NCBI RefSeq assembly: GCF_009834535.1
Contig: NC_045704.1
Location: 18,724,001 to 18,788,000 of the forward strand
Direction: 5' to 3'
Source: Camelus ferus
Lineage: Eukaryota
DNA length: 64,000 nucleotides
Shown: in pieces, positions 18,991 through 39,400 of the stretch
How positions within the stretch are numbered: the stretch's first letter is position 1
How the letters are laid out: the number at the start of each line of letters is the position of its first letter
Translations under genes and position numbers: made by a program
Notes under the pieces: generated by a model
What the model saw: the letters and a program-made list of their open reading frames with translations, nothing else
Told to the model about the DNA's origin: nothing
The model's database searches: none

Positions 18991-21134
18991 GTAACACGAT
19001 AAAACCTTTCTGAGAGCATCTACCTCCCTCCAGGCCAAATTCCCCTCCTCATGGGCCCGAATTGGATCACTGTGACACATGTCCTCTCTTTTCCCTCTAG
19101 GTTCACTCTCCACTCTGCTCTGGGTCCAGGATTACATCAGTGGGGACTCCCCGACCTTCTGTCTTCCAGCTGGTGTCGGCAAGGGGAGGTGTCGGCAGAA
19201 GATTGGAGGTGGGAGAAGAGAGCAGGTGGGTGTTTACTCTGTTGTCTACTTCCCTGCTGGGCTGTGGGCTGGCAGCAGTGTTATTCCAGAATCTCTGTCG
19301 GGGGACTAGTAACCACTCCCTCCCATGTCACTTCTGGTGGCTTAGGAATGGTGACGGCTTCTGGCTATTGGCTGGGCCTGGGGGCTTCCCTCTGTCGGTT
19401 TCCTTTAACCATGCCCCTCATCTGTACTTTGTTGCTTAAATAAATCCCTTACGCCATTGGACCATTTGGTATCCTGCTGGGATCCTGGCGGATGCAGTCA
19501 CATAGTCATGTCTGCACAAACCAATCCCATGATTGGTTTAGGTCAATAAAGATTCACCCCGAAAGGATGTGGGGGAGGGGCTGTGCCAAAAAGAACCTCA
19601 TGAGAAATTTTTGTTGAGCTGACAACTGTGTCTCTTTTATCCATTTTAGAGATAGGGCCTTTGGATAAAGCTTCCTCTCTTATTTGACAGCTCACATGTT
19701 AGAAAAAATTTTTAATGATGATAAATTGATTTAATAATGAGTCCTTATGTTGTGCCAGGGTCTGTGCTTGAGTACTTGACAAGATTTAACACATTTAATT
19801 CCCACAACCACCCGACGAGGAAGGATATTAGAACTATTGTACTGACTGGAAATGAAAAGTTTAGCTGACTCGCCAGGTCATACAGTAATGAAGTGAGCAG
19901 AAGTTGGGATTCTAAGATCTCTCTGACCTCAGGGTTTGCATTTTTAGCCACTAAACTCATACCATCTCCTTTATTGTATTGAGATACTTCTGTCCGTCAG
20001 GTGAGATACTAATTGCTTAATGTATATGGTTTCTAATCTACAGAAGACCCTCTTTACATGAATACATACCACCATCACCTCACACCCAAACTCCCTCACC
20101 CATTCTTAGGCACTCCAGTTAGCTCTCCTCTTCCGAGGCCTGAACTTTTAGAAACATACATGGAGCAGTTGCTTCTTTGCTTAAAACTTTGCAGTGATTC
20201 CCTATGTATCGTCCAGGAATATCCCAGTACTTAAAGAGCTCACAGACCCAAAGGCCCTGGTCTCTGTCTACCTGTCTAACCTCACTCCCAGCCCTTCTGC
20301 GGAGCTCTGGACTCCAGCACATCGACCTCCTTTCTATTCCTCAAACTTTGATGACCAGCTTCCCAGTCTGAAACTCCCTGAGGACCAGAGCCTGTGGCTC
20401 TGTGTCCCCAATAATGGCAACTAACAGGCAACCAGGAAATACTGTCCATGTAGAATGGACAGACCACTGAATGGTTGCATGGATGAATGAATGAACGTTT
20501 CAAAGAGAGGCATCCCTAAGTTATTTTCAGATGAAGAACTCTAGAGGCCAGGAAAGGCAAGTGTATTACTAAAAGTGACTTGGCAGGTCAGTGTTCCATC
20601 TGAGTATCAAATTCAGGTCCGAGTCCACAGTTGGGTTACCCTTCACTCACACTAGTAAGTGTAACACCATTTAATAAATAAAAATGAGTTGACACCAGGA
20701 GAAGAGAATTATACCGCAGGTACCAGGGCTTGCAAACACAAGGCCATATCGATAGCAGAATCCAAAGTATCATAACTGGGACTTGATACCTGTGATCCCC
20801 AAATCCCTCAGGGACTGAGATCTAAGAGTGACAGAGTCACAGAATCCCAAAAAGATACTGAGGGTTCAAATCAGAGGGCCAGCCATGGAATGCTCAGAGG
20901 AACACAAGCAATGACATGAGTAAGACTGACCCAGGGTGTGTGTGGGTCAGAGGCCAAAGCAACCCAGGAATCAAGTCTACTGACCACGCAGGAAGATATT
21001 CCAGCCACTGCTGCTCAAGGCACCTTATCCTGTACTATACTAAATATTCTCATTATTAAGGCATTTTTAGTTACTATTACTTTACTTGTAACAGAATGCA
21101 ACCTAGTGACACCATCACACCATCACACATATAC

Positions 21135-21742
21135 TGTGCTTGGCTGAATAATAATCCCACAAAAATACCCAGACCATCCCTAGAAGCTATAAATATTTCA
21201 TGTTACATGCCAAAGGGACTGTACTGATGTAATTAAGGTTTATTAACTTTAAAATACGGAGATTATCCCGGGGAACCCGAGAGGGCCCAATCTAAACACA
21301 TAAGTTCTTAAAAGCAGAAAATATTCTCAGGCTGGAGGCAGAGGAGAATGTGGCAGAAGGAGAAGTGGGAGGGATTGCCAAGCATGAGGAGGACCTGATC
21401 CACCATCGCGGGCTCTGAGGTAGAGTGTCCATGTGCCAGGACCAGAAAGAGACCAAGAGTTAAGGATGGGCCTTCACAGCCAGCAAGGAAATGGGACATC
21501 AGTCTGCCACCACAAGGAACAGAATTCTGCCAACAACTTAGATGGGTTTTCAAGCAGATGGTTCCCAGAGCCTCCCAAACAACCAGCCAACTGCACTATG
21601 ACTCAGCCTTGTGAGACCCACAGCAGGGGAACCAGGCGAGCTCACCCGATCACTGCCCTGTGGAAACGTGAGAGAAGGAATTCAACTTGTGTTGAGATGC
21701 TCAGTTTGGGACAATTTGTTAGGGCAGCAAAAGTAGACCAAT
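21135..21742 (+). mobile_element. MLT1-type MaLR LTR just downstream of the IFNL2 copy (duplicated counterpart at ~41070-41660)
   Basis: TGTGCTTGGCTGAATAATAATCCC...GATGTAATTAAGG...AATTTGTTAGGGCAGCAA MaLR motifs. Confidence 0.7.
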
Positions 21743-21973
21743 CCTCACACACGCAGTCGCAGACCACAAAGAGCATCTTTTCCTCATTGTTTATTTGCAA
21801 AATTTTTACAAAAAGTAGAAAAATAAACATTTTATTGGGTCTGAGTTTGAGAATTCATACACATAAATACAAAAATAGTGACTTGCAGGCAATAAATTAA
21901 GAAAATGGTTCTGATGCATCAATACACAAATAACATGTAAGATGCTGGAACAGGTTGCAGGTAGATCTCAGGC

Positions 21974-23411
21974 TCAGACACACAGGTGTCCGCTGGCGAC
22001 ACATTTCAGGTCCCGGGTGAGGAGGCGGAAGAGGTTGAACATGACAGAGGCCTCGAGGCAGTCCTGGGACTCCTGTGGGAGGGGAAATGGCTCAGTGGTC
22101 CCCGTGCCTGGGCGCCCAGCTGCTCCCAGACATCAGTTTCCCCACCGCGGTCACTCACCTTCTTCGGGGCCTCCTGGAGCCGGTGCAGCCAGTGGTGGAG
22201 GCGGTCCCGGGGCCTGGGGCCTGCTGTGGGCTGAGCTGGGACCTGTGGGCAGAGGAGGGGGGTGTGAGGGGGTGAGGAAGGGCCTGGGACAGAGAGGGAC
22301 ATTCAGGTGGTCAGAGCCCAGACACGCTGCGGGTGGCCCGAGCACTCACACAAGCCTGGAGCTGGGAGTGGATGTGGCCCAGGGTGTGCAGGGGCTGGTC
22401 CAGGGTGCTGCCCAGGGATGAGTTAGCCATGGTCCCCAGGACGGCCAGGGTCAGGGCCACCTCAGCCTTCAAGGCCACGGGACGCTCCCACACCTGAGGC
22501 GGGGAGACAGGGGCAGGGGAGAGCTGCATGTGAGAGAGGACAAGGGAGGAGGGACAGGTGGGGAGGACACAGGCAGGGACAGTTGAAGGGGAAGGTCAGG
22601 GTCAGGGGAGAGGCACAGCCGATGTGGTCAGCGGAGGGGAAGGGGTCGGGGACAGGTGGGCAGGGCGGAGAGAGGAGGAGGCGGGAGGAGGAGGAGGGGA
22701 GGGGCCGCCTGCAGAGCCAGGTGATCTGGGCCAGGTGAGGGCAGGTGGGCCTGACTCTCCGGACTCACCTGCAGCTGCCTCAGGTCCCGGGTCCTGGGGA
22801 AGATGCGCGAGCTGCAGTTCCAGTCCTTCTGCAAGAGTGACTCTTCCTAGGGAGCAAGAGCAAGGTCAGCCCACAGCACGACCGAGGGGAGACCCCGGTG
22901 AGACTGGAGGGAGGCCGACCTCAGGAGGAGGGGAGGTGAAGGTCCAAAGGACGGCAGAGGCACGACCACCACAGGAGGACAGGGCTCAGCCCTCTGCGGG
23001 GAGGGCGAGGGGCCGGTGAAGGGAGAGCAGGTCCCCCTTGAGCAGAGGAAGCCCGGGCACCCACAGCGCGGGGGTGGAGGGGAGCCCACAGCAGGCGGGG
23101 CTGGGGGACACTCACAAAGGCGTCCTTGGCTCTCTTGAAGGCCTGCAGCTCTTGTGGGGACAGAGACTTGAACTGGGCCAGGTGGCAGCCCCTTGTGCCC
23201 GGGAGGGCCCTGAGGGGTGAGGGGACAGGAACTGCTCCTGTCCTGGTCAGCGCTGCGGTCATCAGCAACAGCCCCAGCAGGCAGCCCGAGGTCATGCCTG
23301 TGTTGTGGAAGGAGAGGAACGTGAGGGGACGTAGGTCACTGGGGACTGAGGGGAGGGCGTTTTGTGGGGCTCAGGTCCCGGGCAATGATGTCGGAGCTCA
23401 CCCAGCTTCAT
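21974..23411 (-). CDS. IFNL2: Interferon lambda 2/3-like, positional IFNL2 copy. Coding exons 23411-23402 (MKLG mini-exon), 23297-23116, 22846-22769, 22493-22350, 22242-22159, 22072-21974. 198 aa, or 194 aa from the ATG at 23295.
   Basis: Translated exons MTSGCLLGLLL...GCHLAQFKSLSPQELQAFKRAKDAF / EESLLQKDWNCSSRIFPRTRDLRQLQ / VWERPVALKAEVALTL...QLQAC / VPAQPTAGPRPRDRLHHWLHRLQEAPKK / ESQDCLEASVMFNLFRLLTRDLKCVASGHLCV* match the IFN-lambda family. All introns are GT-AG and the frame is open. The protein is identical to the + strand copy, so the IFNL2 versus IFNL3 name rests on synteny only. Confidence 0.95.
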
Positions 23412-23637
23412 TCCTGGTCTCAGGTCTCTGGTCTCTGGTCTCTGTCAGCAGGTGGGGGATCAAGTGTCCACTCCGAGGCTGTCGCCTGAGATCTCTCAGT
23501 CTTGTTTGACGTCTCTGACCCCAGTCTTCTCTTCTGGACCTCAGCCCGCTGCTCTGTCCGAGTGTCTGAACTTCCAGCTCCGTCTGAGGTCTAATTCCTG
23601 CCTGAGCTCCATGGTGCCGCTTTTAGCCTGTGCAGCT

Positions 23638-23773
23638 GGGCAATCCCAGCTGATGTAGGAAAAGTGAAAACACAGCTAGAGGGTGACACCGGCCACCAGG
23701 GAGGCCCAGGCAGGAAAGCCCAGAGCAGGGCGGGGCCTGGGAGCCAGGTGAGCAGCTGAGTGAAAGAGAAACT
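23638..23773 (-). promoter_or_regulatory. IFNL2-copy proximal promoter with the same ISRE, IRF and kB-like sites
   Basis: GGGCAATCCC at 23638-23647, GGAAAAGTGAAAAC at 23658-23671, GAAAGAGAAACT at 23762-23773. Confidence 0.75.
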
Positions 23774-26225
23774 GACATCCATTGGGGCTCACCTCCAAGA
23801 AAGTGCGTTCTGAAGACAAAATCCAGGCTGGGGCAGCTGCAGCCCCACATGGGGGTGCCTTGTGCAGTGGCCAGGCTAGATCTAGGACTGGAGTGGGGAG
23901 GGGACAGAGGGATTCCTTTCTGCAGGATGCCCCAGTGCAGGGAGTGGAGGGAAAGAGCACGCCTAGAAGGAGTTGCCGGGAAGAACCTGGACCTTCCAAG
24001 TGGGAGGCTGTTTAGGTGATGGGAGAAGATCTGGGGGTGCTGCTGGGGGTGGGGAGAGAGAGTCAGAAGGCAAAACACACCCATTAAGAGAGAAGACCAG
24101 CTCCTCCCCACCTTTTGCAACCTGGTACAGACAAAGATGGAATGGGGGAGGAGGGGAGCCCGCACTAACATCTCTAATTGTCCAGGCATAGAAGGACCCA
24201 GGAACAGGAGGCTCTGCTCTGGAATTGCGGGCCGACCAAGCCTTCAAGGGAACCAGCTTGGTTTGTGACAAACACCTTCATTCGTTCACCAAATATTTAT
24301 TCAGCCACCACTTTGGGTCAGACCCTGTTCAAGGTGCCAGGGCAAGAGCACTGAAAAAAGAAAAAGACATACCACAATCCTTCATGGAGCTTTTTACTAG
24401 AGAGGAGGAACACACAGTGGAGGTCGGGGAGTTAGGCTTGTGGTGTGTATTGTGTCAGAGAACGTCAGATAACAGAAAATGAAAAAATGAAACAGGGATG
24501 AGAGCAGAGTGCGGGAGGAAGTTTGCATTAAATGAGGTGTCTGAGAAATGACATTTAGGGAAAGACCTAAAGGAAGTGAGGGAGGGAGCTCTGTGAAGAT
24601 CCGAGGGGGAGCATTCTGCGAAAAGGGAACAGTCAGTGCAAAAGGAAAACAGACACCACCGCCACCCCCACTTTTGGTGTATGTCTCACCCTGTCACAGA
24701 GGCTTGGCCACAACGTGGTTAAATACCCACAATAGCACCAAGGACTTACTGTGCTTTGCCTACATGTCAAATACAGATGGAAGTTTAGAGACTCAGAGAG
24801 GTTAAGAGACTTGTTCAAGGTCACACAGCAAATAACTAGTGAGGGCAGGATTTTAACTGAGTTTTGCCTGGCATCAGGCAATAACCACTGCACCCTCCAG
24901 CCTGACTGTAGCGAGACCTCCTGGACCTGGAAGTGATGGATTTCTTGGACAGAAGTTGCTGAGTCCTTTTTGACTGTTACTCCCACCCTCTCTTTCCCTC
25001 ATTTTAATTCCAGGGAGAGGGTAGACTGAAATCCATGTTGGGGAATATCTTTGAGGTCTGATACGCAAAAATGTTTTAAAATCAATAGCAGGGATGTGCA
25101 AGTCACCCCCGGTGTTCTGGTCAGTTTCTGTCACTTGGAGGAGGCCTTACCTCAGGGGAGGAGACAATGAAACAAGAATGAATTTTGAAAATTTACTTAT
25201 TATCTCAAAATCCCTAGACATCATAATGTCTTTCTTAGAAAGAAAGCTCAGGGAGTGGTTAGGAACATGTGATCGAGAGCTGAAGACTTGGGGGCTCCTC
25301 ACTAGCTGTGTGATCTTGGGAAACAGGCTTTGCAGTTGGCCACAAAGATTACCCATCCTGCCCAGATCTTGATGAATGTAAAAAGTACAATTGTTTGCAC
25401 TTTTATGTGTGTGATTATTTCATGGAGACCATTTATTAAGATCATTCTGTGACTTCAGCTGGAAGCTTCACGAGCACTATTTCAATGTGTATTACTCATG
25501 GCAAGGGACGTGTAATAATATCATGGCATAGAAGACTAAACGGAGGCTGGGTACACAATTAAGTGTCAGGGGCAGAACTGAAACTCAGGTCACCTGATTT
25601 CCCTCTCAGCATTTTGTGCTGTACAGTCACCCTCAAAATGATCACAGAGAAACAACCAATGCAAATGCAATAATATTTAATAACTGGCGATAAATTAACC
25701 CAAGAAGACAAAAGAGCAAATATACATAGGAACTTCATAAATACAAAACACGCAAAAGTAACGGAATTCAAAAAACTACTTAACAGAAGGACTCTTGCCC
25801 AGTCCCTCATGGAATGAGGTCTCCCCAGCAGAGAGATCCAACAGTCCCATATTCATGGAATGTCAAAGCGGGCACTGAAGGTTCAAAGCAGGCGTTGGAA
25901 CCTGTCAAGGGACAGGGAGGTTTCTGCAACCACAGAAGTAGAAACTGGTCCATGGTACGTGGTGGTCAACGACCAAGGTCGACACGGAATCCAGTCTTTT
26001 CCTGCCAGCCCGGGGCCCTGGAAGATCTTAGGGCGACACTTCCCACGGAAATAGAGCGGCTTCCAGGGGGAACTGGTTCTGGCCCTGGGAAAAGGGCGCC
26101 TCTGGCACCAGCGCAGGCGGGTGGAGGCTGAGAGACCCGCCGGGTCCAATGGGGCAGCGGAGGAGGGCGGCGCCCGCAGCCAGGCGACCTCGCAGCTTCG
26201 GGTCCCAGGCGGGGCCGCGGCGGGA

Positions 26226-27567
26226 TCACAGACAAGGTCCCGAGTTTGCCACCAGCCGCAGGTCCCACGCGAGCAGGCGCAGGAAGTTGAAGATGACTCT
26301 GGCTTCATGACACCGAGGCGACTCCTGGAACCCGGGAAGGAGGCAGAGCCGGGCTGAGTCAGGCCCTCCCCCCCCCCCCTGCACTCCGTCACCGCTCCAA
26401 GGCGCGCGCCCGGCCCGTCTCAGCCTCACACCGTCCTCTCTGCGGTCTAACCGCTTGACCGCCCGCTCCACTCACAGCTCTGCGAGTTTTGTGACGCCTC
26501 CTGGGCGGCCGCGGGGACTTCCTCCAGGAGCCTGGCCGGACCAGCTGGAGCTGGAGGGGAACCGCACGTAACTTGAAGACGGCGAAGAACGGAGCCTCCC
26601 TCCCAGGTGGCTCCGCCCCTCACCCTCCCAGCCGCAGACCCAAGCCCGGATTAGGGGACACCGAGCGAGCTGGGAGGGGTGCGGGGCCAGGGCGGGACCG
26701 GCACTCACGCAGGCCGCCACGTCCCGCCCCGCGGCCGTCAGCAGCTCCAGGGTCGGGCCGACGCCGGGGAACAGCTCCGGGCTCGGCAGGCTGCTCAGCA
26801 CGGCCTGGGCGTCGGCGAGGCCGCGGGCCACCAGGCGGAGTCGGGCGCAGGACTGCGGGGACCGAGCGGCAGTTAGATGGGGCCGCGCTCGGGGCCCAAG
26901 TCCCCAAGCCCCTGCCGGCCGCGGGCCTCACCGACGGCGGCGGAGGGTTCCTCCTCGGGTGGAACGAGCAGTTGCGCGGCCTCCAGCTCAGCGTCTCTTC
27001 CTCCTGCGGGACAAGGGCCGGGATGATGCTGGGGATCCTCGCGGATTCCTGCACGTGGATCGGAACTGGCCCTCAAGGTTGTGCTCATCGTGTCCTGACC
27101 AGAGAGCTCTCTGAAGGCGCGAGGCAGGCCTGAAATGCACCTGCGCTCCAGGTGCGGATCCTGCGCCGGGACGTGGAGCCGAGTCCACCTGAAGGGGGCG
27201 CCCCTCTGTGACAGCCACTAAGGCCCGGTATGAGCTGACCACCAGGGCGGCTGGAAAGATGTGATCTGAATTCTGGACCCCGAGATCCAGGATGCGCCTG
27301 CTGGACGCTAGGACAAGAGGGCCCCTCGGGACAAAGGTTGTCGTCTCGGGACCCGGGGGCCCAGGGTCCGGGGGACAGAGGCGTGTGGGCATCACTCACA
27401 TAGCGGTTCCTCAGGGCCTTGGCTGCCTCCAGTGCCCGGGGATCCAGGGAGCGGTATTGGGAGAGGAGGCAGCGCCCGGGAGCCTCCACACCGGGGTCCA
27501 CCGCCACGCCCGCTGTCACCAAGACCCACAGCCCCATGGCCACCGCGGCTGCGCCACTCGGCCCCAT
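26226..27567 (-). CDS. IFNL4: Interferon lambda 4, second intact copy at the position of human IFNL4P1. Exons 27567-27400, 27003-26932, 26852-26709, 26550-26476, 26324-26226. 185 aa.
   Basis: Mirror image of the + strand copy. The ORF-track translations covering each exon are identical between the copies, splice sites are GT-AG, and I found no stop or frameshift. Confidence 0.93.
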
Positions 27568-29019
27568 CTCTGCTCCTGCAAGAGGCGACAGACGTCAGGG
27601 AGCCCAAGGAGAAAGCCCCCAAGTCCAAGCCCCTGCCTCTGGTCAGACTCGCAGAGGGATTGACGCTCAGAGGGCGGGCACTGAGCCCTCTCAGGGGGAG
27701 AGACAGGATGGGCCCGGACACCTACTCCTACCTTCAGCCTCTCTCCCCTCACTCCTCACCTACCATGTGTCTTCGGTGCCACTTGCTGCAGCAGGGCCTG
27801 CCTTCCAGTGTCCCCTGGGTGGTGTCCCGGGTGGTGTCCAGATTGTTGTCCACCTGGGACAGTGGTACCTGCACCCTCCATGGTGGCTCTTAAGTGAGGG
27901 GCTGAGAATGATGAGCAGCCGGGCTTCCCCATGCAGATTGTTTCCCAACGTCATTGCTGGCCATTGATCGGCCTGGAGAGTTGCAGGCATGGTGTGAGGA
28001 CTTTACCCGCTCGTGGGACAGTGCCAGCAATGACTCTACCCAAACTCTTCTGCCACCAGTTATTGTTTCTGTCCCTTTCTGTATCCTCTTGCTTTCTTTT
28101 CGTCACCGTCGGTTTCCTTATCTCTGTTGTATAATAATAACCAGCCCTTATACAGTGTTACTGTTACTAGGCCTTGTTCTAAGTAATTGATATGCACATG
28201 TCTCATTTAATGCTCAAAAATAACACTGCCAGAATTTTTCTACCTCCAATTCATGGGTGGGAAAACTGAGCCACAGTAAAGGGAAGGAACTTTTCCAAGA
28301 TACAAAGTAACTGGCAGAGGCAGGATTTGAATATATACTCAGTCCAGCCTCAAAGCTTGGTCTAACCCATTAACTCCCCCTATATATCTAATTCAATGCC
28401 TCCTTCTCTCTCTTCACTGTCTGTCTGTGTTTCATTCCATTTCTCTTTCATCCCTCTCTTTATGCCTCCCTTTTGTCTCTGTTGCTCAGTTCCTGGTTTT
28501 GTCTCTGTCCATGTCTAATTCCATCTTTCTTTTTCTAGCAAGCATTCAGGCCAGGGTCTTTCTGTCTGTCTCTGTCTCAAGCAGTCTCTTTGTTTTGAAT
28601 GAAAAATGAAATCTACCACTTATCTTGATAAAATTAGCAAAGCAGGATCATTGGTTAAAGCTTGAAAAATATAGACATAATATAAGGGAGGAAAAAACCC
28701 ACCTCTCTCCCCTCACCCCAGCTCTGGAACAATTTTTCCCATGTGTAGAAATGTTAAACATATTTATTTGTGCATATGTTTTCTGATTATCAAAGTAACA
28801 CATTCATTATAAAGATACAGTCAATACAAAAACATACAACTTGGAGAGTTAAAGTCTTGAATCCCACTTCCTGGACGTCATCTTTTTAGTCATCAGTTAC
28901 TATTCCTCTTTTTTTTTTTCTCTCTCTCTCTCTCTCTTTCGATGAACAATTTCTCTCAAATTGAAACCAGGCTGTATAAAGTTTAGCAGCTTGCTTTTCG
29001 TGTCTTACCATTATCTCTT

Positions 29020-29404
29020 TTTTTTTCTTTTTCTTTTTTAACATTTTTTATTGATTTATAATCATTTTACAATGTTGTGTCAAAGTCCAGTGTAGAGCAC
29101 AATTTTTCAGTTATACATGGACATATATATATTCATTGTCACATTTTTTTCTCTGTGAGCTACCATAAGATCTTGTGTATATTTCCCTGTGCTATACAGT
29201 ATAATCTTGTTTATCTATTCTACAATTTTGAAATCCCATCTATCCTTTCCCACCCTCCGCCCCCTTGGCAACCACAAGTTTGTATTCTATGTCTGTGAGT
29301 CTATTTCTGTTTTGTATTTATGCTTTGTTTTTTTTGTTTTTGTTTTTGTTTTTGTTTTTTAGATTCCACATATGAGCGATCTCATATGGTATTTTTCTTT
29401 CTCT
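29020..29404 (-). mobile_element. 5'-truncated young L1 with a perfect 15-bp TSD, in the palindrome spacer
   Basis: TTACCATTATCTCTT at 29005-29019 and 29405-29419 around a T-tail and L1 3' UTR sequence. Confidence 0.85.
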
Positions 29405-29999
29405 TTACCATTATCTCTTGTTTGCATTCCCCCACATCTTTAGTTATATTGTATCAGTGAAGGTCCCTTCAGGAAACAGATGGCCCAGTCAGTTTAGGGT
29501 AACTTGAGGTGGGTTTAATACCAGGAGTATTTACAAACGGATTGGATAGTGAAGGAAACAGATGAGGAGTAGTGCAAGGCCTTGGGACCCACATGCATGA
29601 GGGTCTATCATCTGTAGGCCTGAACAAAAGGGAGGGAAGGGAGTGGTTACTTGACCTGGAAGGGAGGGGTCAGGTACACAGGTGGAGGACACAGAGAGGT
29701 AGTGGTTGCCCTGAATGAAGGAAGCCTGGGGAGTAAATACTCTAACACTCTCCTTCTCTTCTCTCTGGCCCTACTCCTAGGCTCCCCATTGGCTGCACCC
29801 AACAGAAGCCAAAGGCCAGCTTCCTGGGGCCCAGAGGTGGGTGGAGAAGTGGGAGGGGCAAAAGGGAGACATCCCACCTATACCACTAGTAAGGCTTCCA
29901 TTCTAACAGGATTATTGAATAACCATCCCCTATTGGTGAACATGAATGTTCTTTTCAGTGTTTTGTTAAAGTCATGGTTCTCAAGGCTAGGGGTGAGAA

Positions 30000-32900
30000 A
30001 GGAAGTAATTTTTCATTCTTTTAACAGTATCTTTCATAGGGCTGAAGTTTTATATTTTTCCATCTCATTGATTTTCTTCTTTTATGGATGATGCTTTCAT
30101 GATTTTAATAAGTCATCACCTTGGTCCCTTACATTTTCTCCTATTTTACATTCTAGGAGTTTTATAGTTCTGCACTTCACGTTTAGGTCTATGATACGTT
30201 TTAAGTTAATTTTTGTGAAATGTGTAAGGTCTGTATCTAGGTTTTTTGTTTTTTCCCCTACGTGAAAGTTCTTTCAATACCATTTGTTGGAAAGACTATC
30301 TTCTCATCATTGAATTGCCTTTGTTCCTTTCTTAAAGACCAGTTGACTTTATTTGNNNNNNNNNNNNNNNNNNNNNNNNNNNNNNNNNNNNNNNNNNNNN
30401 NNNNNNNNNNNNNNNNNNNNNNNNNNNNNNNNNNNNNNNNNNNNNNNNNNNNNNNNNNNNNNNNNNNNNNNNNNNNNNNNNNNNNNNNNNNNNNNNNNNN
30501 NNNNNGTGAAAGCTATTCTGGGCTTTTTGGATCGCTGTATAAACTTTTACTTTGTCAATATTTACAAATTAACTTGCTGGGATTTTGATTGGATTGCAAG
30601 GAATCTACAGATTAAGTTGGGAAGAACTGACATCTTGACAATATTGAGTCTTCCTATCCAAGTTCATAGAGTATTTTCATTTTTAGATGTTCTTTTATTT
30701 CTTTCATCAGTTTTCCTCATATAGATCGTGTTCAGCATTTGTTAGATTTGTACTTAAGCATTTCATTTTTGGGTGGTGCTGATGTAAATGGTCCTTTTTT
30801 TAAATTTCAAACTCAAATTGTTTATTGCTATTATACAAGAAAGAAATGGACCTTTGTATATTAACTTTTATCTGGCAACATTGCTATAATCACTTATGAT
30901 TCAGAAATATGTTTTTAAATGCATAATATTAAATACACAGGACTATGAAGGAAACTGACTATATTGAAACACAGTTACCAAAACATAAAAGCAATTTTGT
31001 GATAAGTAATACATATGCCTTTTTATTAATGTATTAAGTAACAAGATATTGCAATGAGTTTAATAACTACTATACTTTTGTGGTAGTAATGAGAGTAAAT
31101 GATATTTCAAGATGTGTGCCACATCGCTAACATGTTATGAAATATTTATGACTCCTTTTAGTGACAAAGTCACAGATTCTGCTAATACTATTGTGGTTTG
31201 TTACTTACATTCATCATGGAAAGAAATGCTAAATTTCAGTTAAGGTTAGTGAAGATGGAAATGCAGCTTTTTCTCATGTAAGTTCACCCTCCCCTGAATC
31301 CTATCATGGGGTGGTCCACGAACCCCAGGTTAAGCTAGATTTGCAGCAGTTAAACAGAATGAAGTAGATCTATATGCACTGACATGGAAAAACTTTCAAG
31401 GCATATTACAGAGTGAAAAAAGTAAATTGCTGAACAATACACATGGTGTGACACTCCTTGTGTTTATAAGTACTCACACATGCAAAAGCAATTCAGTGGA
31501 GAAAAATCGCCTATTCAACAAATAGTGCTGGAGTAATTGGACACCCATAGGCTAAAAAAATGAACCTTGACCTAAACCTCACATTAAAATAAAAATTAAC
31601 TCAATATGTGACATGGACTTAAACATAAATTATAAAGCTATAAAACTTTGAGAAAGAATTATGAAAAACCTCTTCAGGCAATAGGAGGTGCTGGAAGCAG
31701 ATTGAGGGAGGAAGGAAAGCAAAGTTGGAGTATTTATTCTCCCTTCTGGTTCCTTCCTGGCAGGGATAAGATCTGACAGTGGCTGGGTTCCTCTGTCTCC
31801 AGCCACACATCTCACCTAGGATGGTAACAGCTCTCCGTGTTGCCAGCCTCCAGGTGCATCACCGCCCTTTGTTGATTTCATTAATCCTACCCACTTTTTC
31901 CCAGGTTAAACATTTGAATAGGTCCCCTGCTTCCTGTACATATCGTTTTTTCCGGAGTTTGTTTAATTGAAATTTTTACTGAGATCATTGTAAGGTACCT
32001 CTGGGAAGCACATGGGAACCGAGGAGATGATCATGCATGCTGTTATAAGAAATAATACAAAGAGATCCTGTACACTCTACCCAGCTTCCCCTAGTGGTCA
32101 CATCTTACAAAATTACAATATTACAACCAGGAAATTGAAGGATACAATCCACCCGTCTTATTCAGATAGCCCCTAGATGTTCATCTAAATTGTTGCATGT
32201 ATCAATTGTTCATTCCTGTTTCATACCAGACTTTGCTTAATCGTTCACCCTTTGAAGGACCTCTGGGCTGTTTCTACTTTTCGGCTATTACTAATAATGC
32301 TGCAATGAACATTTGTGTTCAGATGACTGTGTGGACATCAGTTTTCATTTCTCTGGAATAAATACCCAGGAGTTCAATTGCTGGGTTGATGTGCAGTTGC
32401 ATGTTTAGTTTTACAAGAAGCTGCCAAACTGTGTTTTGGAGGGGCTGTACAATTTTTACATTCCTGCAGGTCACTTATGAGGGATCCAGTTTCTAGATTG
32501 TTTTTTAAGTTTTGCTCACAAATAAGTTCCCCAGAGCTTTTTTTGTTGTTGCTATTGTCTCCTAAATTCTTGAAGCAGTTTTCTTTTAATAGAGTAAACA
32601 TCTCAAACAGTGGATCTCAAGAAACTTTTCTGCGAGGATGATATTTGTCTTTGTCCAGTTGGGCTGCTTATAACAAAATACCACAGACTGGGGAGCTTAA
32701 AAACAACAGAAATTTATTTCTTACAGTTCTGGAGCCACGATCAAGGCACCAGCATGGTCAGGTAAGAGCTCTCTTCCAGGTGACAAAATTCTCATTTGGT
32801 CCTCACATGGTGGAAGGGGGCGAGGGAGCTCTGTGAGGTCTCTTTTTAGGAGGACTAATCCCATTTTTGAGGGCTCCATCTCATGACTTAATCACCTCCT

Positions 32901-33000
32901 AAAGACCTCCACCTCCTAATACCATCACCTTTGTTGGTTAGGATTTCAACATAACAATTTTTGAGGGGACATTCAAACCACAGCAGCCTGTATTAAATGT
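30000..33000. mobile_element. Spacer repeat mosaic: antisense L1 fragments, a Charlie-type hAT fragment (~30900-31335) and an MLT1 LTR (~32640-32990)
   Basis: Recognisable L1 antisense text, an hAT-like end (CCACGAACCCCAGGTTAAG) and an MLT1 start (GGGCTGCTTATAACAAAATACCACAGACTGGG). Confidence 0.6.
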
Positions 33001-35247
33001 AATTTGTGATTGCACCTAACTCAAGCAAATAACCTGCATTGCAGTGCCCAGAGTTGAATCACTGATTATTGAGAACTTGCATCTGGTACTTTCCTGTGTC
33101 CAATCCCACTGCATTCCACTCTTCCTGCCGTTATCAATTTTACTTCCAGTTCTTCAGTCTTTGAAGACACGTGGTTTCACTTCAGCCCCATCATGTGTAT
33201 CAGGACACTTTTGGTAGCAAAAATAAAAAACAAACAAACCAAAAGTCCAACTCAAGCTGGCTTGAACAATGGAGAACTTATGGACTTATAAAACTGAGAA
33301 GTCCAAAATTAAGGTGAGGCTGCAGGTAAAGTTTGATCCTGTAAGACATAGTGAAACTCCCAATTTTGTTTTATCTTGTTTTTTATCTTTCAGGTCTCCC
33401 TTCCACTGGTGGGAAGACTGCTTACCCTTATAATTCCAAGATGAGTGCTAGTGATTCCCCTGGCTTCACACTTCATCCTTCTCCAGTAGGAAGAAGATAG
33501 CGTCTTTCTCCCAGAAAGTCCAGGATTGAGATTCATTCTGATTAGATTGGCTTAAGTCAAATCCCCAACCCCAAACCCAATCACCGTGGCCAGAGAGATG
33601 AACTAAAGTAAATGGCTGCAGCCAGGTCACATACCCCAATCCCAGGGATGCGGGGGGGTGGTCAAGTCACCTTCCTAAAACCATTTGGATCTGCAGTCGA
33701 AGTGGGGGATGCTGGGATGGGTGAGGGGAGAGGTAACAGAAGCTTGGAAAGTTTGCTGCATGGACACTTTGGAGGAAACTCTTCTAATGTTTCAGCAGAA
33801 TTTCTCACGTGCTTTTTCAGAGTGCTTATGTTTCAACAACTTTGATGTTTCTTAAAACTTCTATGCCTTGGAATAGGAAAATATACACTGAAAAACAAAA
33901 TAAGTTTCTCATATTAATGCTGAGGAAGACATATACCTGAAAAACAGCCATTACTTTCCTGCAATTATCAATATTTATTAATGAACTTAATTATAATTAA
34001 TTAAAGGTGGTCTCATATAGGAAGCTTGGCTGAACGTGCCCTGAACATACCTAAGCTATTCTGCACATGGATAGATCTGTCTATATAGATGAGAAATGGC
34101 AACACTAACCCAGACAGCCTGGGATCATATCTACAAGCTGTGTGATCTTGGGAAGACTCATAGCCTCTCTGTGCCTCAGTTTCCTCATCTATAAAATGTC
34201 AGCCAGTGAGAGGACCTACCTCACAGTGTTGCTGGGAAGAATAAAGCAGTAAATATGTGAGAAGAGCTTAAAGCAGTGCCAAGCACACAAGAAGTGCTCA
34301 GTATGTATTAGCTATAATTATTATTGACAATGGTTGAGAAAAACATGTCTGCAATTCCAACTTTCAACAGCAAACTAACAATAGTTTTATAATTGGTAAA
34401 GGCATAAATATCACTTAATAACAGACTAAGGAGGCCAGAGAGAGCTTGTCTAAGGTCTTGATGAGGAAAAAACCTGAGAAAACAGAGGAGAGCAATATTC
34501 ATGCAAAGAACAAGATATAAAAAGACAGGGAGAGAAAGACAGGATATAATGACAAGAAAAGAGTGATTGAAGAGAGAGCACAAGAAACCCTAGTATGAAC
34601 TCCTGCAGGGCAGGCACTTGTATGGGGACCTCTGCCATGTTTGCAGCTTCCAACAGGAGGAAATAGTCTGTTTTCAGTTCACTCTTAGAGTGTGAAAGAA
34701 AGAGAAACACACAGAAAAGATAAACAGAATCCTCAAAATGAACAGTAGTAATTGACCCAGGAGAGAGGGTCCGAGCAAAGTCATTGTTGACACTGTCCCA
34801 CAAGCAGGTAAAGTCATCACACACTGGCCAGGATCCCACCCGGCCAGCAGCCAGCAATGGATGACATTGGGAAACAACCGGCATGGGGAAGCCCGGCTGC
34901 TCATCATTCTCAGCCCCTCACTTAAGAGCCACCATGGAGGGTGCAGGTACCACTGTCCCAGGTGGACAACAATCTGGACACCACCCGGGACACCACCCAG
35001 GGGACACTGGAAGGCAGGCCCTGCTGCAGCAAGTGGCACCGAAGACACATGGTAGGTGAGGAGTGAGGGGAGAGAGGCTGAAGGTAGGAGTAGGTGTCCG
35101 GGCCCATCCTGTCTCTCCCCCTGAGAGGGCTCAGTGCCCGCCCTCTGAGCGTCAATCCCTCTGCGAGTCTGACCAGAGGCAGGGGCTTGGACTTGGGGGC
35201 TTTCTCCTTGGGCTCCCTGACGTCTGTCGCCTCTTGCAGGAGCAGAG

Positions 35248-36586
35248 ATGGGGCCGAGTGGCGCAGCCGCGGTGGCCATGGGGCTGTGGGTCTTGGTGAC
35301 AGCGGGCGTGGCGGTGGACCCCGGTGTGGAGGCTCCCGGGCGCTGCCTCCTCTCCCAATACCGCTCCCTGGATCCCCGGGCACTGGAGGCAGCCAAGGCC
35401 CTGAGGAACCGCTATGTGAGTGATGCCCACACGCCTCTGTCCCCCGGACCCTGGGCCCCCGGATCCCGAGACGACAACCTTTGTCCCGAGGGGCCCTCTT
35501 GTCCTAGCGTCCAGCAGGCGCATCCTGGATCTCGGGGTCCAGAATTCAGATCACATCTTTCCAGCCGCCCTGGTGGTCAGCTCATACCGGGCCTTAGTGG
35601 CTGTCACAGAGGGGCGCCCCCTTCAGGTGGACTCGGCTCCACGTCCCGGCGCAGGATCCGCACCTGGAGCGCAGGTGCATTTCAGGCCTGCCTCGCGCCT
35701 TCAGAGAGCTCTCTGGTCAGGACACGATGAGCACAACCTTGAGGGCCAGTTCCGATCCACGTGCAGGAATCCGCGAGGATCCCCAGCATCATCCCGGCCC
35801 TTGTCCCGCAGGAGGAAGAGACGCTGAGCTGGAGGCCGCGCAACTGCTCGTTCCACCCGAGGAGGAACCCTCCGCCGCCGTCGGTGAGGCCCGCGGCCGG
35901 CAGGGGCTTGGGGACTTGGGCCCCGAGCGCGGCCCCATCTAACTGCCGCTCGGTCCCCGCAGTCCTGCGCCCGACTCCGCCTGGTGGCCCGCGGCCTCGC
36001 CGACGCCCAGGCCGTGCTGAGCAGCCTGCCGAGCCCGGAGCTGTTCCCCGGCGTCGGCCCGACCCTGGAGCTGCTGACGGCCGCGGGGCGGGACGTGGCG
36101 GCCTGCGTGAGTGCCGGTCCCGCCCTGGCCCCGCACCCCTCCCAGCTCGCTCGGTGTCCCCTAATCCGGGCTTGGGTCTGCGGCTGGGAGGGTGAGGGGC
36201 GGAGCCACCTGGGAGGGAGGCTCCGTTCTTCGCCGTCTTCAAGTTACGTGCGGTTCCCCTCCAGCTCCAGCTGGTCCGGCCAGGCTCCTGGAGGAAGTCC
36301 CCGCGGCCGCCCAGGAGGCGTCACAAAACTCGCAGAGCTGTGAGTGGAGCGGGCGGTCAAGCGGTTAGACCGCAGAGAGGACGGTGTGAGGCTGAGACGG
36401 GCCGGGCGCGCGCCTTGGAGCGGTGACGGAGTGCGGGGGGGGGGGGGCCCTGACTCAGCCCGGCTCTGCCTCCTTCCCGGGTTCCAGGAGTCGCCTCGGT
36501 GTCATGAAGCCAGAGTCATCTTCAACTTCCTGCGCCTGCTCGCGTGGGACCTGCGGCTGGTGGCAAACTCGGGACCTTGTCTGTGA
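35248..36586 (+). CDS. IFNL4: Interferon lambda 4. Exons 35248-35415, 35812-35883, 35963-36106, 36265-36339, 36488-36586. 185 aa.
   Basis: MGPSGAAAVAMGLWVLV...RCLLSQYRSLDPRALEAAKALRNRY / EEETLSWRPRNCSFHPRRNPPPPS / SCARLRLVARGLADAQAVL...AGRDVAAC / LQLVRPGSWRKSPRPPRRRHKTRRA / ESPRCHEARVIFNFLRLLAWDLRLVANSGPCL* matches human IFNL4 exon by exon (exons 2-5: 24, 48, 25 and 32 aa). All introns are phase-0 GT-AG. AATAAA at 37375-37380. Confidence 0.96.
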
Positions 36587-39038
36587 TCCCGCCGCGGCCC
36601 CGCCTGGGACCCGAAGCTGCGAGGTCGCCTGGCTGCGGGCGCCGCCCTCCTCCGCTGCCCCATTGGACCCGGCGGGTCTCTCAGCCTCCACCCGCCTGCG
36701 CTGGTGCCAGAGGCGCCCTTTTCCCAGGGCCAGAACCAGTTCCCCCTGGAAGCCGCTCTATTTCCGTGGGAAGTGTCGCCCTAAGATCTTCCAGGGCCCC
36801 GGGCTGGCAGGAAAAGACTGGATTCCGTGTCGACCTTGGTCGTTGACCACCACGTACCATGGACCAGTTTCTACTTCTGTGGTTACAGAAACCTCCCTGT
36901 CCCTTGACAGGTTCCAACGCCTGCTTTGAACCTTCAGTGCCCGCTTTGACATTCCATGAATATGGGACTGTTGGATCTCTCTGCTGGGGAGACCTCATTC
37001 CATGAGGGACTGGGCAAGAGTCCTTCTGTTAAGTAGTTTTTTGAATTCCGTTACTTTTGCGTGTTTTGTATTTATGAAGTTCCTATGTATATTTGCTCTT
37101 TTGTCTTCTTGGGTTAATTTATCGCCAGTTATTAAATATTATTGCATTTGCATTGGTTGTTTCTCTGTGATCATTTTGAGGGTGACTGTACAGCACAAAA
37201 TGCTGAGAGGGAAATCAGGTGACCTGAGTTTCAGTTCTGCCCCTGACACTTAATTGTGTACCCAGCCTCCGTTTAGTCTTCTATGCCATGATATTATTAC
37301 ACGTCCCTTGCCATGAGTAATACACATTGAAATAGTGCTCGTGAAGCTTCCAGCTGAAGTCACAGAATGATCTTAATAAATGGTCTCCATGAAATAATCA
37401 CACACATAAAAGTGCAAACAATTGTACTTTTTACATTCATCGAGATCTGGGCAGGATGGGTAATCTTTGTGGCCAACTGCAAAGCCTGTTTCCCAAGATC
37501 ACACAGCTAGTGAGGAGCCCCCAAGTCTTCAGCTCTCGATCACATGTTCCTAACCACTCCCTGAGCTTTCTTTCTAAGAAAGACATTATGATGTCTAGGG
37601 ATTTTGAGATAATAAGTTAATTTTCAAAATTCATTCTTGTTTCATTGTCTCCTCCCCTGAGGTAAGGCCTCCTCCAAGTGACAGAAACTGACCAGAACAC
37701 CGGGGGTGACTTGCACATCCCTGCTATTGATTTTAAAACATTTTTGCGTATCAGACCTCAAAGATATTCCCCAACATGGATTTCAGTCTACCCTCTCCCT
37801 GGAATTAAAATGAGGGAAAGAGAGGGTGGGAGTAACAGTCAAAAAGGACTCAGCAACTTCTGTCCAAGAAATCCATCACTTCCAGGTCCAGGAGGTCTCG
37901 CTACAGTCAGGCTGGAGGGTGCAGTGGTTATTGCCTGATGCCAGGCAAAACTCAGTTAAAATCCTGCCCTCACTAGTTATTTGCTGTGTGACCTTGAACA
38001 AGTCTCTTAACCTCTCTGAGTCTCTAAACTTCCATCTGTATTTGACATGTAGGCAAAGCACAGTAAGTCCTTGGTGCTATTGTGGGTATTTAACCACGTT
38101 GTGGCCAAGCCTCTGTGACAGGGTGAGACATACACCAAAAGTGGGGGTGGCGGTGGTGTCTGTTTTCCTTTTGCACTGACTGTTCCCTTTTCGCAGAATG
38201 CTCCCCCTCGGATCTTCACAGAGCTCCCTCCCTCACTTCCTTTAGGTCTTTCCCTAAATGTCATTTCTCAGACACCTCATTTAATGCAAACTTCCTCCCG
38301 CACTCTGCTCTCATCCCTGTTTCATTTTTTCATTTTCTGTTATCTGACGTTCTCTGACACAATACACACCACAAGCCTAACTCCCCGACCTCCACTGTGT
38401 GTTCCTCCTCTCTAGTAAAAAGCTCCATGAAGGATTGTGGTATGTCTTTTTCTTTCTTCAGTGCTCTTGCCCTGGCACCTTGAACAGGGTCTGACCCAAA
38501 GTGGTGGCTGAATAAATATTTGGTGAACGAATGAAGGTGTTTGTCACAAACCAAGCTGGTTCCCTTGAAGGCTTGGTCGGCCCGCAATTCCAGAGCAGAG
38601 CCTCCTGTTCCTGGGTCCTTCTATGCCTGGACAATTAGAGATGTTAGTGCGGGCTCCCCTCCTCCCCCATTCCATCTTTGTCTGTACCAGGTTGCAAAAG
38701 GTGGGGAGGAGCTGGTCTTCTCTCTTAATGGGTGTGTTTTGCCTTCTGACTCTCTCTCCCCACCCCCAGCAGCACCCCCAGATCTTCTCCCATCACCTAA
38801 ACAGCCTCCCACTTGGAAGGTCCAGGTTCTTCCCGGCAACTCCTTCTAGGCGTGCTCTTTCCCTCCACTCCCTGCACTGGGGCATCCTGCAGAAAGGAAT
38901 CCCTCTGTCCCCTCCCCACTCCAGTCCTAGATCTAGCCTGGCCACTGCACAAGGCACCCCCATGTGGGGCTGCAGCTGCCCCAGCCTGGATTTTGTCTTC
39001 AGAACGCACTTTCTTGGAGGTGAGCCCCAATGGATGTC

Positions 39039-39174: not shown

Positions 39175-39400
39175 AGCTGCACAGGCTAAAAGTGGCACCA
39201 TGGAGCTCAGGCAGGAATTAGACCTCAGACGGAGCTGGAAGTTCAGACACTCGGACAGAGCAGCGGGCTGAGGTCCAGAAGAGAAGACTGGGGTCAGAGA
39301 CGTCAAACAAGACTGAGAGATCTCAGGCGACAGCCTCGGAGTGGACACTTGATCCCCCACCTGCTGACAGAGACCAGAGACCAGAGACCTGAGACCAGGA

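What the first reader, a model, noticed from the sequence alone, without database searches (positions are those of the whole stretch)
21030..21742. Sharp identity step at the arm ends: signature of ongoing arm-to-arm gene conversion
Seen: near-identity stops at 21597/41215, inside a shared MLT1 LTR, but homology continues at lower identity out to ~21030/~41757. One 71-nt sample (about 21381-21451 against 41352-41422) has 11 mismatches (~85%), and the flanks also contain indels. The same step occurs on the inner side (27934/34881, with diverged homology for another ~120-180 bp). Within 6.3 kb of arm I found only about 9 differences, all non-coding (21637/41175, 22717/40095, 23619/39193, ~24354, ~25194, ~25370, ~25926, the poly-G tract, 27352/35463). 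Inference: an old duplication whose gene-bearing core is repeatedly homogenised, like X/Y palindromes. The diverged flanks also argue against a false duplication in the assembly. Conversion would explain why IFNL4 stays intact in both arms and means a mutation in one copy can spread to both.
Basis: partly seen in the sequence, partly recalled or inferred. Interest (0 to 1): 0.75.

Follow-up and report, generated by a model that had tools for sequence, protein, structure and literature searches.

The report
Camel interferon-lambda palindrome kept identical
In the wild Bactrian camel, two mirror-image 6.3-kb copies of the antiviral genes IFNL3 and IFNL4 are almost letter-identical, yet their edges are about 20% diverged. 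Comparison with other species shows an old duplication whose core keeps being copied from one arm to the other, a well-known process.

Summary
Arms 21597-27934 and 34881-41215 differ at 10 substitutions plus one poly-C length change (99.84%). Identity falls to 84.5% of aligned bases (79% with gaps) in the outer 567 bp and about 75% in the inner 100 bp. The maximum-likelihood step lies at 21597.

- The window is Camelus ferus.
- In dromedary and alpaca the outer step is at the same nucleotide.
- The diverged flank groups by side (100/100 support), while the core groups by species (AU test p = 1e-101).
- 138 substitutions, and every indel separating the genera, are fixed in both arms of one genus. 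No side-specific site is shared across genera.
- Homogenisation went on after the ferus/dromedary split.

A clouded leopard has the same inner duplication breakpoint, spacer and outer DNA. The palindrome therefore predates the carnivore/cetartiodactyl split.

Both IFNL4 copies have identical coding sequence (185 aa). All arm differences are non-coding.

Three things could not be checked:
- the MLT1 label, because no repeat library is available;
- GC bias, which is only weakly suggested.

This is a clean new example of a known process. This scan already noted the same process at two other loci of this genome (SPRR2, PRSS21/41).

The parts
21030..21596 (.). Outer diverged flank of the left arm (F_L). 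It is old arm DNA that no longer takes part in conversion.
   Evidence: 84.5% identical to 41216-41757 with indels. Groups by side across camelids. Orthologous to DNA 3' of IFNL3 in narwhal and hippo.
21597..27934 (.). Homogenised core of the left arm.
   Evidence: 99.84% identical to the right core. Pairs with the right arm of the same species in the tree.
21977..23295 (-). IFNL3-like gene, left copy. Five coding exons; poly-A signals at 21790 and 21831.
   Evidence: tblastn of camel IFNL3 proteins P0093/P0094. Poly-A signal scan. No arm difference lies in an exon.
26226..27567 (-). IFNL4, left copy. Exons 27567-27400, 27003-26932, 26852-26709, 26550-26476, 26324-26226.
   Evidence: GT-AG gene model giving 185 aa, 100% identical to dromedary P0002:43-227.
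27935..28040 (.). Inner diverged flank of the left arm.
   Evidence: 75.5% identical to 34775-34880. The same stretch is still identical between the two arms of the clouded leopard.
28041..34774 (.). Spacer, with an assembly gap at 30356-30505.
   Evidence: No arm-to-arm homology. Its two ends are orthologous by type in cat, narwhal and camelids. Its orientation is flipped in alpaca and in a second dromedary assembly.
34775..34880 (.). Inner diverged flank of the right arm. Contains a densely changed segment.
   Evidence: The left version resembles narwhal and warthog; the right version is the derived one.
34881..41215 (.). Homogenised core of the right arm.
35248..36586 (+). IFNL4, right copy.
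   Evidence: Mirror of the left gene model. Coding sequence and protein are identical to the left copy, with GT-AG at all four introns.
39517..40835 (+). IFNL3-like gene, right copy.
   Evidence: tblastn.
41216..41757 (.). Outer diverged flank of the right arm (F_R). Carries a derived 15-bp deletion opposite 21554-21568.
   Evidence: the outgroups keep the 15 bp.
41758..41901 (.). Dispersed-repeat (SINE-like) insert just outside the right flank. It interrupts DNA that is contiguous in narwhal and hippo.
   Evidence: Other copies in the window at 8-163, 11944-12074 and 47422-47546. Narwhal L012 runs 12406 to 12408 across this point.

Best explanation
This is an old inverted duplication (a palindrome) of the IFNL4-IFNL3 gene pair whose core is repeatedly overwritten from one arm onto the other.

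Mechanism (inferred). A break in one arm is repaired using the other arm of the same chromosome as template (non-crossover gene conversion). When the repair is resolved as a crossover, the spacer flips.

History, from the comparisons.
- The duplication arose before carnivores and cetartiodactyls split. Its inner breakpoint is at about 28040/34775, and its arms reached outward at least through 21030/41757.
- On the camelid stem the outermost 570 bp and the innermost 100 bp dropped out of the exchange and have drifted to 15-25% divergence.
- The 6.3 kb between them has stayed at or above 99.84% identity in every camelid examined.

Why the step is sharp (inferred). Once the edge DNA is diverged it cannot pair, so conversion tracts cannot cross it. 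On the outer side there is a 15-bp deletion and 9 differences within 21 bp at 21576-21596. On the inner side there is a densely changed 40 bp. The outer step has stayed at the same nucleotide since before camels and alpacas split.

Rate (rough inference). Arm differences of 0.02-0.16%, set against 2.4% camel-alpaca divergence, imply that each site is overwritten about once per one to three million years.
For: - Step confirmed. The core is 99.84% identical, against 84.5% (outer flank) and 75.5% (inner flank). The change point is at 21597.
- Species identity. The window is Camelus ferus, a 100% match to GCA_009834535.1.
- Flank tree. ((alpaca L,(ferus L, dromedary L)),(alpaca R,(ferus R, dromedary R))) with 100/100 support, rooted by narwhal and hippo.
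- Core tree. Arms pair by species: alpaca 100/100, ferus 95/89, dromedary 99/96. Holding the left arms together costs 757 lnL units, AU p = 1e-101.
- Site patterns in the core. 138 substitutions, and every indel separating the genera, are fixed in both arms of one genus. No side-specific site is shared across genera. After the ferus/dromedary split, 3 substitutions and a 7-bp insertion (23416-23422) sit in both ferus arms, and 4 substitutions sit in all dromedary copies. All 10 ferus arm differences are single-arm novelties.
- Boundaries. The last outer flank difference is at 21596 in ferus, dromedary and alpaca. The inner step differs by lineage: first difference at 27931 in alpaca, 27935 in ferus, 27951 in dromedary.
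- The flank is ancestral arm DNA. It lies directly 3' of IFNL3 in narwhal and hippo and partly in clouded leopard.
- Age. In the clouded leopard, arm homology ends at the same nucleotide as in the camel. The spacer ends are orthologous by type, and the same outer DNA lies on each side.
- Other lineages homogenise other segments. Warthog arms are 99.97% identical over 5.7 kb and hold IFNL3 only. Clouded leopard arms are 98.5-99% identical over 1.9 kb and hold IFNL4 only.
- Crossovers. The spacer is flipped in alpaca and in a second dromedary assembly, as arm-to-arm crossovers would produce.
- Short-read support. At least ten short-read data sets from at least six studies hold most sampled words of both junction stretches.
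Against:
- The C. ferus arm pairing within Camelus rests on few sites (3 substitutions and 1 indel; support 95/89).
- GC-biased fixation, a usual companion of conversion, is only weakly indicated. Equilibrium GC is 0.59 in the core against 0.445 in unique DNA, z about 2, and gene content confounds the comparison.
- Differences in spacer orientation between assemblies could be assembly errors.
- Whole-arm replacement by another recombination route cannot be told apart from long conversion tracts with these data.
Confidence: 0.85

Rival explanations
1. Each lineage re-duplicated the segment recently. One arm was wholly replaced by a fresh copy of the other through break-induced replication or template switching that reused the same edges, instead of by many conversion events.
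For: The outer step is at exactly the same nucleotide in all camelids, as a structural breakpoint would be. Arm-to-arm identity is very uniform along the core.
Against: It would require independent events with identical breakpoints in alpaca, C. ferus and dromedary. The inner step differs by 4-20 bp between lineages. In C. ferus, sites fixed in both arms interleave with single-arm differences, which fits patchy tracts better than one sweep. In outcome this reading is just a very long conversion tract.
Confidence: 0.07
2. The near-identity is an assembly artefact. Either one copy was placed twice (false duplication), or short-read polishing copied one arm's letters onto the other.
For: The window has assembly gaps, one of them in the spacer. 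The CamDro3 dromedary assembly shows an evidently artefactual doubling of the unit, with junction pieces 88-96% identical and full of gaps. No read depth could be obtained.
Against: The two arms have different, diverged flanks on both sides. The same structure, with arm identity of at least 99.84%, appears in four independent assemblies of three species, each with its own private arm differences. Many independent short-read sets hold both junction stretches. Polishing cross-talk happens only where arms are already nearly identical.
Confidence: 0.03
3. The core is one young duplication. The diverged 'flanks' are two unrelated copies of a dispersed repeat (for example MLT1) in which the duplication breakpoints happened to fall.
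For: A breakpoint inside a shared repeat would give a sharp step at a fixed place.
Against: The flank has no other copy in the 64-kb window. It is contiguous, orthologous DNA 3' of IFNL3 in narwhal and hippo. The left and right flanks are nearer to each other than to those outgroups. The inner flank is still identical between the arms of the clouded leopard. A single young duplication cannot give arms that group by species in lineages that already shared the structure.
Confidence: 0.02

Closest known systems
Human and mouse IFNL2/IFNL3 inverted duplication, and the great-ape IFNL4-like copy upstream of IFNL2
   Same: It is the same locus and layout. Fox et al. 2009 (PMC2654155) describe about 6 kb around IFNL2 and IFNL3 that is more than 97% identical, inverted, with about 10 kb between, in both human and mouse. 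Prokunina-Olsson 2019 (PMC6767866) describes an IFNL4-like copy upstream of IFNL2 that is about 92% identical to IFNL4.
   Different: Those papers leave open, or favour, recent lineage-specific duplication. [quoted passage not shown] The 2019 review suggests a segmental duplication in the Hominidae. Here the diverged flanks and the cross-species trees decide for conversion in camelids, and a shared breakpoint with a felid shows one old duplication. In camelids both IFNL4 copies are intact and identical, whereas in great apes the second copy carries a stop.
Sex-chromosome palindromes of primates (Y palindromes P1-P8, X palindromes)
   Same: Inverted arms with a unique spacer, arm identity above 99%, maintenance by arm-to-arm gene conversion, occasional spacer inversions, and persistence across species (PMC3723533, PMC8981503; abstracts).
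   Different: This palindrome is autosomal and small. Its arms are 6.3 kb, against 9 kb to 1.45 Mb for the Y palindromes (sizes from my own knowledge). It carries innate-immunity genes, not testis genes. The inferred conversion rate is much lower, roughly once per site per 1-3 Myr. GC bias is weak here. The structure appears older than the 25 Myr or more documented for X palindromes (my own knowledge), since it predates the carnivore/cetartiodactyl split.
Other homogenised inverted gene pairs noted by this scan in the same genome (SPRR2 pair; PRSS21/PRSS41)
   Same: An old inverted duplication in which a core is kept nearly identical (AI notes, not checked here).
   Different: Different loci and genes. 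Here both whole transcription units and the DNA between them are homogenised, and the step was traced to the same nucleotide in three species.

Membership tests
Palindrome maintained by arm-to-arm gene conversion (concerted evolution) | Two inverted arms separated by a unique spacer | tested here: met
   Arms 21597-27934 and 34881-41215, with a spacer of about 6.7 kb.
Palindrome maintained by arm-to-arm gene conversion (concerted evolution) | Arm identity far higher than the age of the duplication allows | tested here: met
   The core is 99.84% identical, against 84.5% and 75.5% in the flanks of the same duplication. The structure is shared with alpaca and clouded leopard.
Palindrome maintained by arm-to-arm gene conversion (concerted evolution) | Arms group by species while the structure itself is orthologous between species | tested here: met
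   Core tree and AU test p = 1e-101. Flank tree groups by side, 100/100. 138 concerted substitutions and none side-specific.
Palindrome maintained by arm-to-arm gene conversion (concerted evolution) | GC-biased fixation in the arms | tested here: inconclusive
   Weak-to-strong and strong-to-weak changes are 45:45 in the core (equilibrium GC 0.59) and 53:53 in unique DNA (0.445). z is about 2, and gene content confounds the comparison.
Palindrome maintained by arm-to-arm gene conversion (concerted evolution) | Spacer inversions from crossovers between the arms | tested here: inconclusive
   The spacer ends are swapped in alpaca and in GCA_048773025.1 relative to C. ferus, CamDro3 and clouded leopard. 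Assembly error is not excluded.
Palindrome maintained by arm-to-arm gene conversion (concerted evolution) | Conversion events seen directly (pedigree, sperm or population typing) | not testable with these tools
Type III interferon (IFNL3 / IFNL4) genes | Encoded proteins belong to the IL28A/IFN-lambda family and are intact | tested here: met
   The nearest proteins are camelid IFNL4 and IFNL3 with precomputed Pfam PF15177. The IFNL4 model has 185 aa, GT-AG introns and identical coding sequence in both arms. The IFNL3 exons are 94.5-100% identical to P0093, except exon 4, whose local match is 76%; I built no spliced IFNL3 model, so its intactness rests on the exon matches.
MLT1 (MaLR) LTR at the step | Match to the MLT1 consensus spanning 21597 | not testable with these tools
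   No repeat library is available. There is no second copy in the window. DNA on both sides of the step is orthologous in narwhal, hippo and warthog.

The most novel reading that the evidence does not exclude
The IFNL4-IFNL3 palindrome may be one autosomal structure more than 70 million years old, shared by carnivores and cetartiodactyls and probably by primates and rodents, and homogenised continuously ever since. Each lineage would convert a different sub-segment: both genes in camelids, IFNL3 only in pigs, IFNL4 only in cats. If so, 'IFNL2' and 'IFNL3' have no one-to-one orthologs across mammals. A loss or gain in IFNL4 could be copied to, or rescued from, the other arm. The camelid step would be a fixed homology cliff that has held its position since before camels and alpacas split (roughly 16-25 Myr).
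Probability: 0.6. Interest if true: 0.6.

Novelty: new member of a known kind. Interest (0 to 1): 0.45.

Why it matters
- It answers, for camelids and by extension carnivores and cetartiodactyls, a question left open since 2009. Near-identical inverted IFNL2/IFNL3 copies in different mammals come from an old duplication plus gene conversion, not from repeated recent duplications.
- That affects how interferon-lambda genes are named and compared between species.
- It explains how camelids keep two identical, intact IFNL4 genes, whereas in humans the IFNL4 gene is often inactivated and the IFNL4-like copy on the other arm carries a stop.
- Any variant in one copy can spread to, or be erased from, the other.
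- It gives a small, well-bounded autosomal palindrome for studying how conversion domains end.
- The process itself is textbook.

Tried and rejected
No depth or allele check was possible. The second run search used 40700-42400, which lies beside them.
- Micro-inversion at the step. The pattern GCCAACTG against CAGTTGGC suggested one, but I rejected it. The outgroups show clustered substitutions in both arms, plus a 15-bp deletion in the right flank.
- GC-biased conversion. Only a weak signal.
- Runs of derived alleles along the arm (R R R R L L L L R R). One-sided p = 0.048, too weak to claim tract structure.
- Alpaca protein P0001 was not on record. The second alpaca arm was reached through P0097 instead.
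- Elephant loci. Two IFNL3-like genes lie 514 kb apart, with no IFNL4 and no palindrome, so they say nothing about a deeper age.
- Hippo locus. The arm abuts NCCRP1-like DNA at the inner breakpoint. This is unexplained and was not used.
- Narwhal. I first read it as having a flipped spacer. I then re-read L012 as the ortholog of the left arm that still holds about 4.4 kb lost from the camel left arm.
- Dating of the flank. The left-right distance is 4.3 times the camel-alpaca distance, yet the flanks are nearer to each other than to narwhal. The clock estimates disagree (about 35 to 90 Myr), so I give only 'camelid stem'.
- Literature. I found no paper on a camelid IFNL palindrome or on a conversion step at this locus.
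Full report
**1. The observation**

The repeat finder reports inverted arms 21594-26377/36435-41218 and 26368-27954/34861-36447, both listed as 100% complementary (rounded). It also reports an 80% pair at 21204-21342/41456-41594. blastn joins these into one alignment, 21030-28035 against 41757-34779, 97.8% over 7017 columns.

In the MAFFT pair alignment the core 21597-27934 (6338 bp) differs from 41215-34881 at 10 substitutions. There is also a 3-base length difference in a poly-C tract.

- The outer flank 21030-21596 has 83 mismatches and 37 gap columns in 573 columns.
- The inner flank 27935-28035 has 24 mismatches and 7 gap columns in 105 columns.
- A two-rate change-point scan puts the step at 21597 (support 21597-21605; likelihood ratio 298).
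- Identity does not decline gradually towards the step.

**2. What the arms carry**

On the minus strand of the left arm lie two genes.

- An IFNL3-like gene at 21977-23295, with poly-A signals at 21790 and 21831.
- IFNL4 at 26226-27567.

The IFNL4 model has five exons and GT-AG introns. It encodes 185 aa, identical to residues 43-227 of the dromedary protein P0002. The mirror copy has identical coding sequence.

All ten arm differences are non-coding:
- 3' of IFNL3;
- IFNL3 intron 2;
- 324 bp upstream of IFNL3;
- four between the two genes;
- two in IFNL4 intron 4, at the poly-C tract;
- one in IFNL4 intron 1.

The homogenised core therefore holds both complete transcription units. It ends roughly 200 bp past the IFNL3 poly-A signals and 370 bp upstream of the IFNL4 start codon.

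**3. Where the window comes from, and what was compared**

Protein searches led to camelid IFNL4 and IFNL3. The encoding loci were then fetched.

- The window is 100% identical to Camelus ferus GCA_009834535.1, CM020776.1.
- It is 99.3-99.5% identical to dromedary CamDro3.
- It is 95.4-97.3% identical to alpaca GCA_048564905.1.
- A further assembly, GCA_048773025.1, is identical to dromedary in the flank and in the core.

**4.

I aligned nine camelid arm sequences.

In the outer flank, sequences group by side:
- ferus L to alpaca L, 95.9%;
- ferus R to alpaca R, 95.8%;
- any L to any R, 83-85%.

In the core, sequences group by species:
- ferus L to R, 99.84%;
- alpaca L to R, 99.89%;
- dromedary copies, 99.97-100%;
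- Camelus to alpaca, 97.6%.

The maximum-likelihood trees agree.
- The flank tree is ((alpaca L,(ferus L, dromedary L)),(alpaca R,(ferus R, dromedary R))), with 100/100 support on both side clades, rooted by narwhal and hippo.
- The core tree pairs the arms of alpaca (100/100), of C. ferus (95/89) and of dromedary (99/96).
- Forcing the left arms into one clade costs 757 log-likelihood units (AU p = 1e-101).

Site patterns in the core:
- 138 substitutions, and every indel separating the genera, are fixed in both arms of one genus.
- No site has a side-specific state shared across genera.
- Since the ferus/dromedary split, three substitutions and a 7-bp insertion (23416-23422) sit in both ferus arms.
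- Four substitutions sit in every dromedary copy.
- Each of the ten ferus arm differences is a novelty of one ferus arm. Six are derived in the right arm and four in the left.

Homogenisation has therefore gone on after the camel/alpaca split and after the ferus/dromedary split.

**5. The boundaries**

The last outer flank difference is at 21596 in C. ferus, dromedary and alpaca alike. The outer step is thus a fixed boundary older than the split of camels and alpacas. It is not a chance tract end.

Just outside it, 9 of 21 positions differ (21576-21596). The right flank has also lost 15 bp that the left flank and the outgroups keep.

The inner step moves a little between lineages. The first difference is at 27931 in alpaca, 27935 in ferus and 27951 in dromedary. 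This shows separate tract ends in each lineage. Just inside the spacer side of that step, the right arm has a densely changed 40-bp segment. The left arm there resembles narwhal and warthog.

I infer that these heterologies stop pairing and so keep the steps sharp. That part is inference.

**6. The flanks are old arm DNA, not independent repeats**

- The outer flank has no other copy in the window.
- It lies directly 3' of IFNL3 in narwhal and hippo. The left flank matches narwhal at 78% and the right flank at 75%.
- In the tree the two camelid flanks are sisters, set apart from those outgroups. They therefore stopped exchanging on the camelid stem. Clock estimates disagree (about 35-90 Myr), so I give no figure.
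- Narwhal L012 continues from the flank into DNA that in the camel lies outside the right arm (41902-43680). About 3 kb further on it reaches DNA that in the camel lies outside the left arm. Its spacer junction is of the left type.

The simplest reading is that the ancestral arms reached further out. The camel left arm then lost about 4.4 kb, which set the outer limit of homology at 21030/41757.

**7. Age**

The clouded leopard has the following:
- the same left outer DNA;
- a left arm reduced to IFNL4;
- a homologous spacer in the same orientation as C. ferus;
- a right arm with IFNL4 and IFNL3;
- the same right outer DNA.

Its two arms are 98.5-99% identical. Arm homology ends at the same nucleotide as in the camel (about 28040). 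Beyond that point the left and right spacer ends of cat and camel match each other by side, with local alignment scores of 138 and 64 against 11-18 for the cross pairs. One duplication therefore predates the carnivore/cetartiodactyl split, roughly 75-80 Myr ago by common timetrees (my own knowledge).

The 100 bp that is 75% identical between the camel arms is still identical between the cat arms. This shows that the camelid conversion domain has shrunk.

The warthog has 5.7-kb arms, 99.97% identical, that hold IFNL3 only. Its single IFNL4 lies in the spacer.

**8. Crossovers**

The two spacer-end types are swapped relative to the outer flanks in alpaca and in GCA_048773025.1. The comparison is with C. 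ferus, CamDro3 and clouded leopard. That is what crossovers between the arms would produce. A 6.3-kb near-perfect inverted repeat is also easy to misassemble, so I rate this as consistent but not proven.

**9. Artefact?**

A false duplication is unlikely.
- The arms have different flanks on both sides.
- Four independent assemblies of three species show the structure, each with private arm differences.
- At least ten short-read data sets from at least six studies hold 80-99% of the sampled words of both junction stretches.

I worked beside those places afterwards.

**10. Rate and bias (inference)**

The core diverges between Camelus and alpaca about as fast as nearby unique DNA: 2.2% of polarisable sites, against 2.4% and 3.2%. 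That is what neutral conversion predicts.

I used the steady-state relation, conversion rate = mutation rate / arm divergence (recalled from the Y-palindrome literature). With a camel/alpaca split of 16-25 Myr (my own knowledge), arm divergences of 0.11-0.16% give about 3-7 x 10^-7 per site per year. That is one overwrite per site every 1.5-3 Myr.

GC bias is only weakly indicated.

**11. What is known**

- Fox et al. 2009 (PMC2654155) described about 6 kb of more than 97% identity around inverted IFNL2 and IFNL3 in human and mouse. They left 'gene duplication or gene conversion' open and favoured independent duplications.
- The 2019 review of the human region (PMC6767866) ascribes the IFNL4-like copy upstream of IFNL2 to a duplication in the Hominidae.
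- Arm-to-arm conversion in palindromes is well documented for primate sex chromosomes (PMC3723533, PMC8981503).
- I found no paper on the camelid locus or on a conversion step at the IFNL locus.
- This scan has noted the same process at two other loci of this genome.

**12. Verdict**

This is a clean and apparently undescribed example of a known process. It has some value for interferon-lambda evolution and for the study of conversion-domain boundaries.

Noticed in passing
L001-L003 (dromedary CamDro3, CM016635.2:63908579-63954043): This assembly shows two tandem 6.27-kb IFNL4-IFNL3 units per arm. The 1.3-kb junction pieces are only 88-96% identical to window 24172-25457 and carry 40-93 gap openings, which looks like uncorrected long-read gap fill. 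The second dromedary-like assembly (L010) has one unit on the arm fetched. The doubling is probably an assembly artefact, and possibly a copy-number variant.
   Followed up: partly
window 28041-34774; alpaca L004+L007; L010: The spacer is inverted relative to the outer flanks in alpaca and in GCA_048773025.1, compared with C. ferus, CamDro3 and clouded leopard. This means either recurrent inversions by crossovers between the arms or assembly errors.
   Followed up: partly
L005+L006 (warthog, CM029259.1:47965279-47998557): The warthog palindrome has 5.7-kb arms, 99.97% identical, that hold IFNL3 only. The single IFNL4 sits in the spacer. Pigs seem to have lost the second IFNL4 together with most of the camel-type spacer.
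   Followed up: partly
L014+L015 (clouded leopard, CM051615.1:15143726-15174144): There are two inverted IFNL4 genes, 98.5-99% identical over 1.9 kb. The left arm has lost its IFNL3 copy: the equivalent of camel 20928-26126 is missing.
   Followed up: partly
L013 (hippo, CM057499.1:50084755-50106062): The arm's inner breakpoint (camel 34878) abuts DNA homologous to camel 52526-56380, which holds an FBA-domain, NCCRP1-like gene, instead of the spacer. This is either a rearrangement or an assembly issue.
   Followed up: no
L012 12408-20902 (narwhal): About 4.4 kb lies between the flank homolog and the homolog of the camel's left outer DNA. It consists of the homolog of camel 41902-43680 plus 3.1 kb with a homeodomain ORF of 141 aa. 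This stretch is absent from the camel left arm.
   Followed up: partly
window 21637-27352: The derived alleles of the ten arm differences come in runs along the arm: four in the right arm, four in the left, then two in the right. The exact runs test gives one-sided p = 0.048. It may be a trace of kilobase-scale directional tracts.
   Followed up: partly
window 26364-26380 and 36435-36449: A poly-C/poly-G tract in IFNL4 intron 4 differs in length between the two arms and between all the species compared.
   Followed up: no
window 23416-23422 and mirror 39390-39396: A 7-bp insertion is present in both C. ferus arms and absent from all dromedary and alpaca arms. It is a species-specific change that has reached both arms.
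   Followed up: yes
L016, L017 (Asian elephant, CM044030.1): Two IFNL3-like genes lie 514 kb apart. Neither has IFNL4 or an inverted partner within 10 kb.
   Followed up: no
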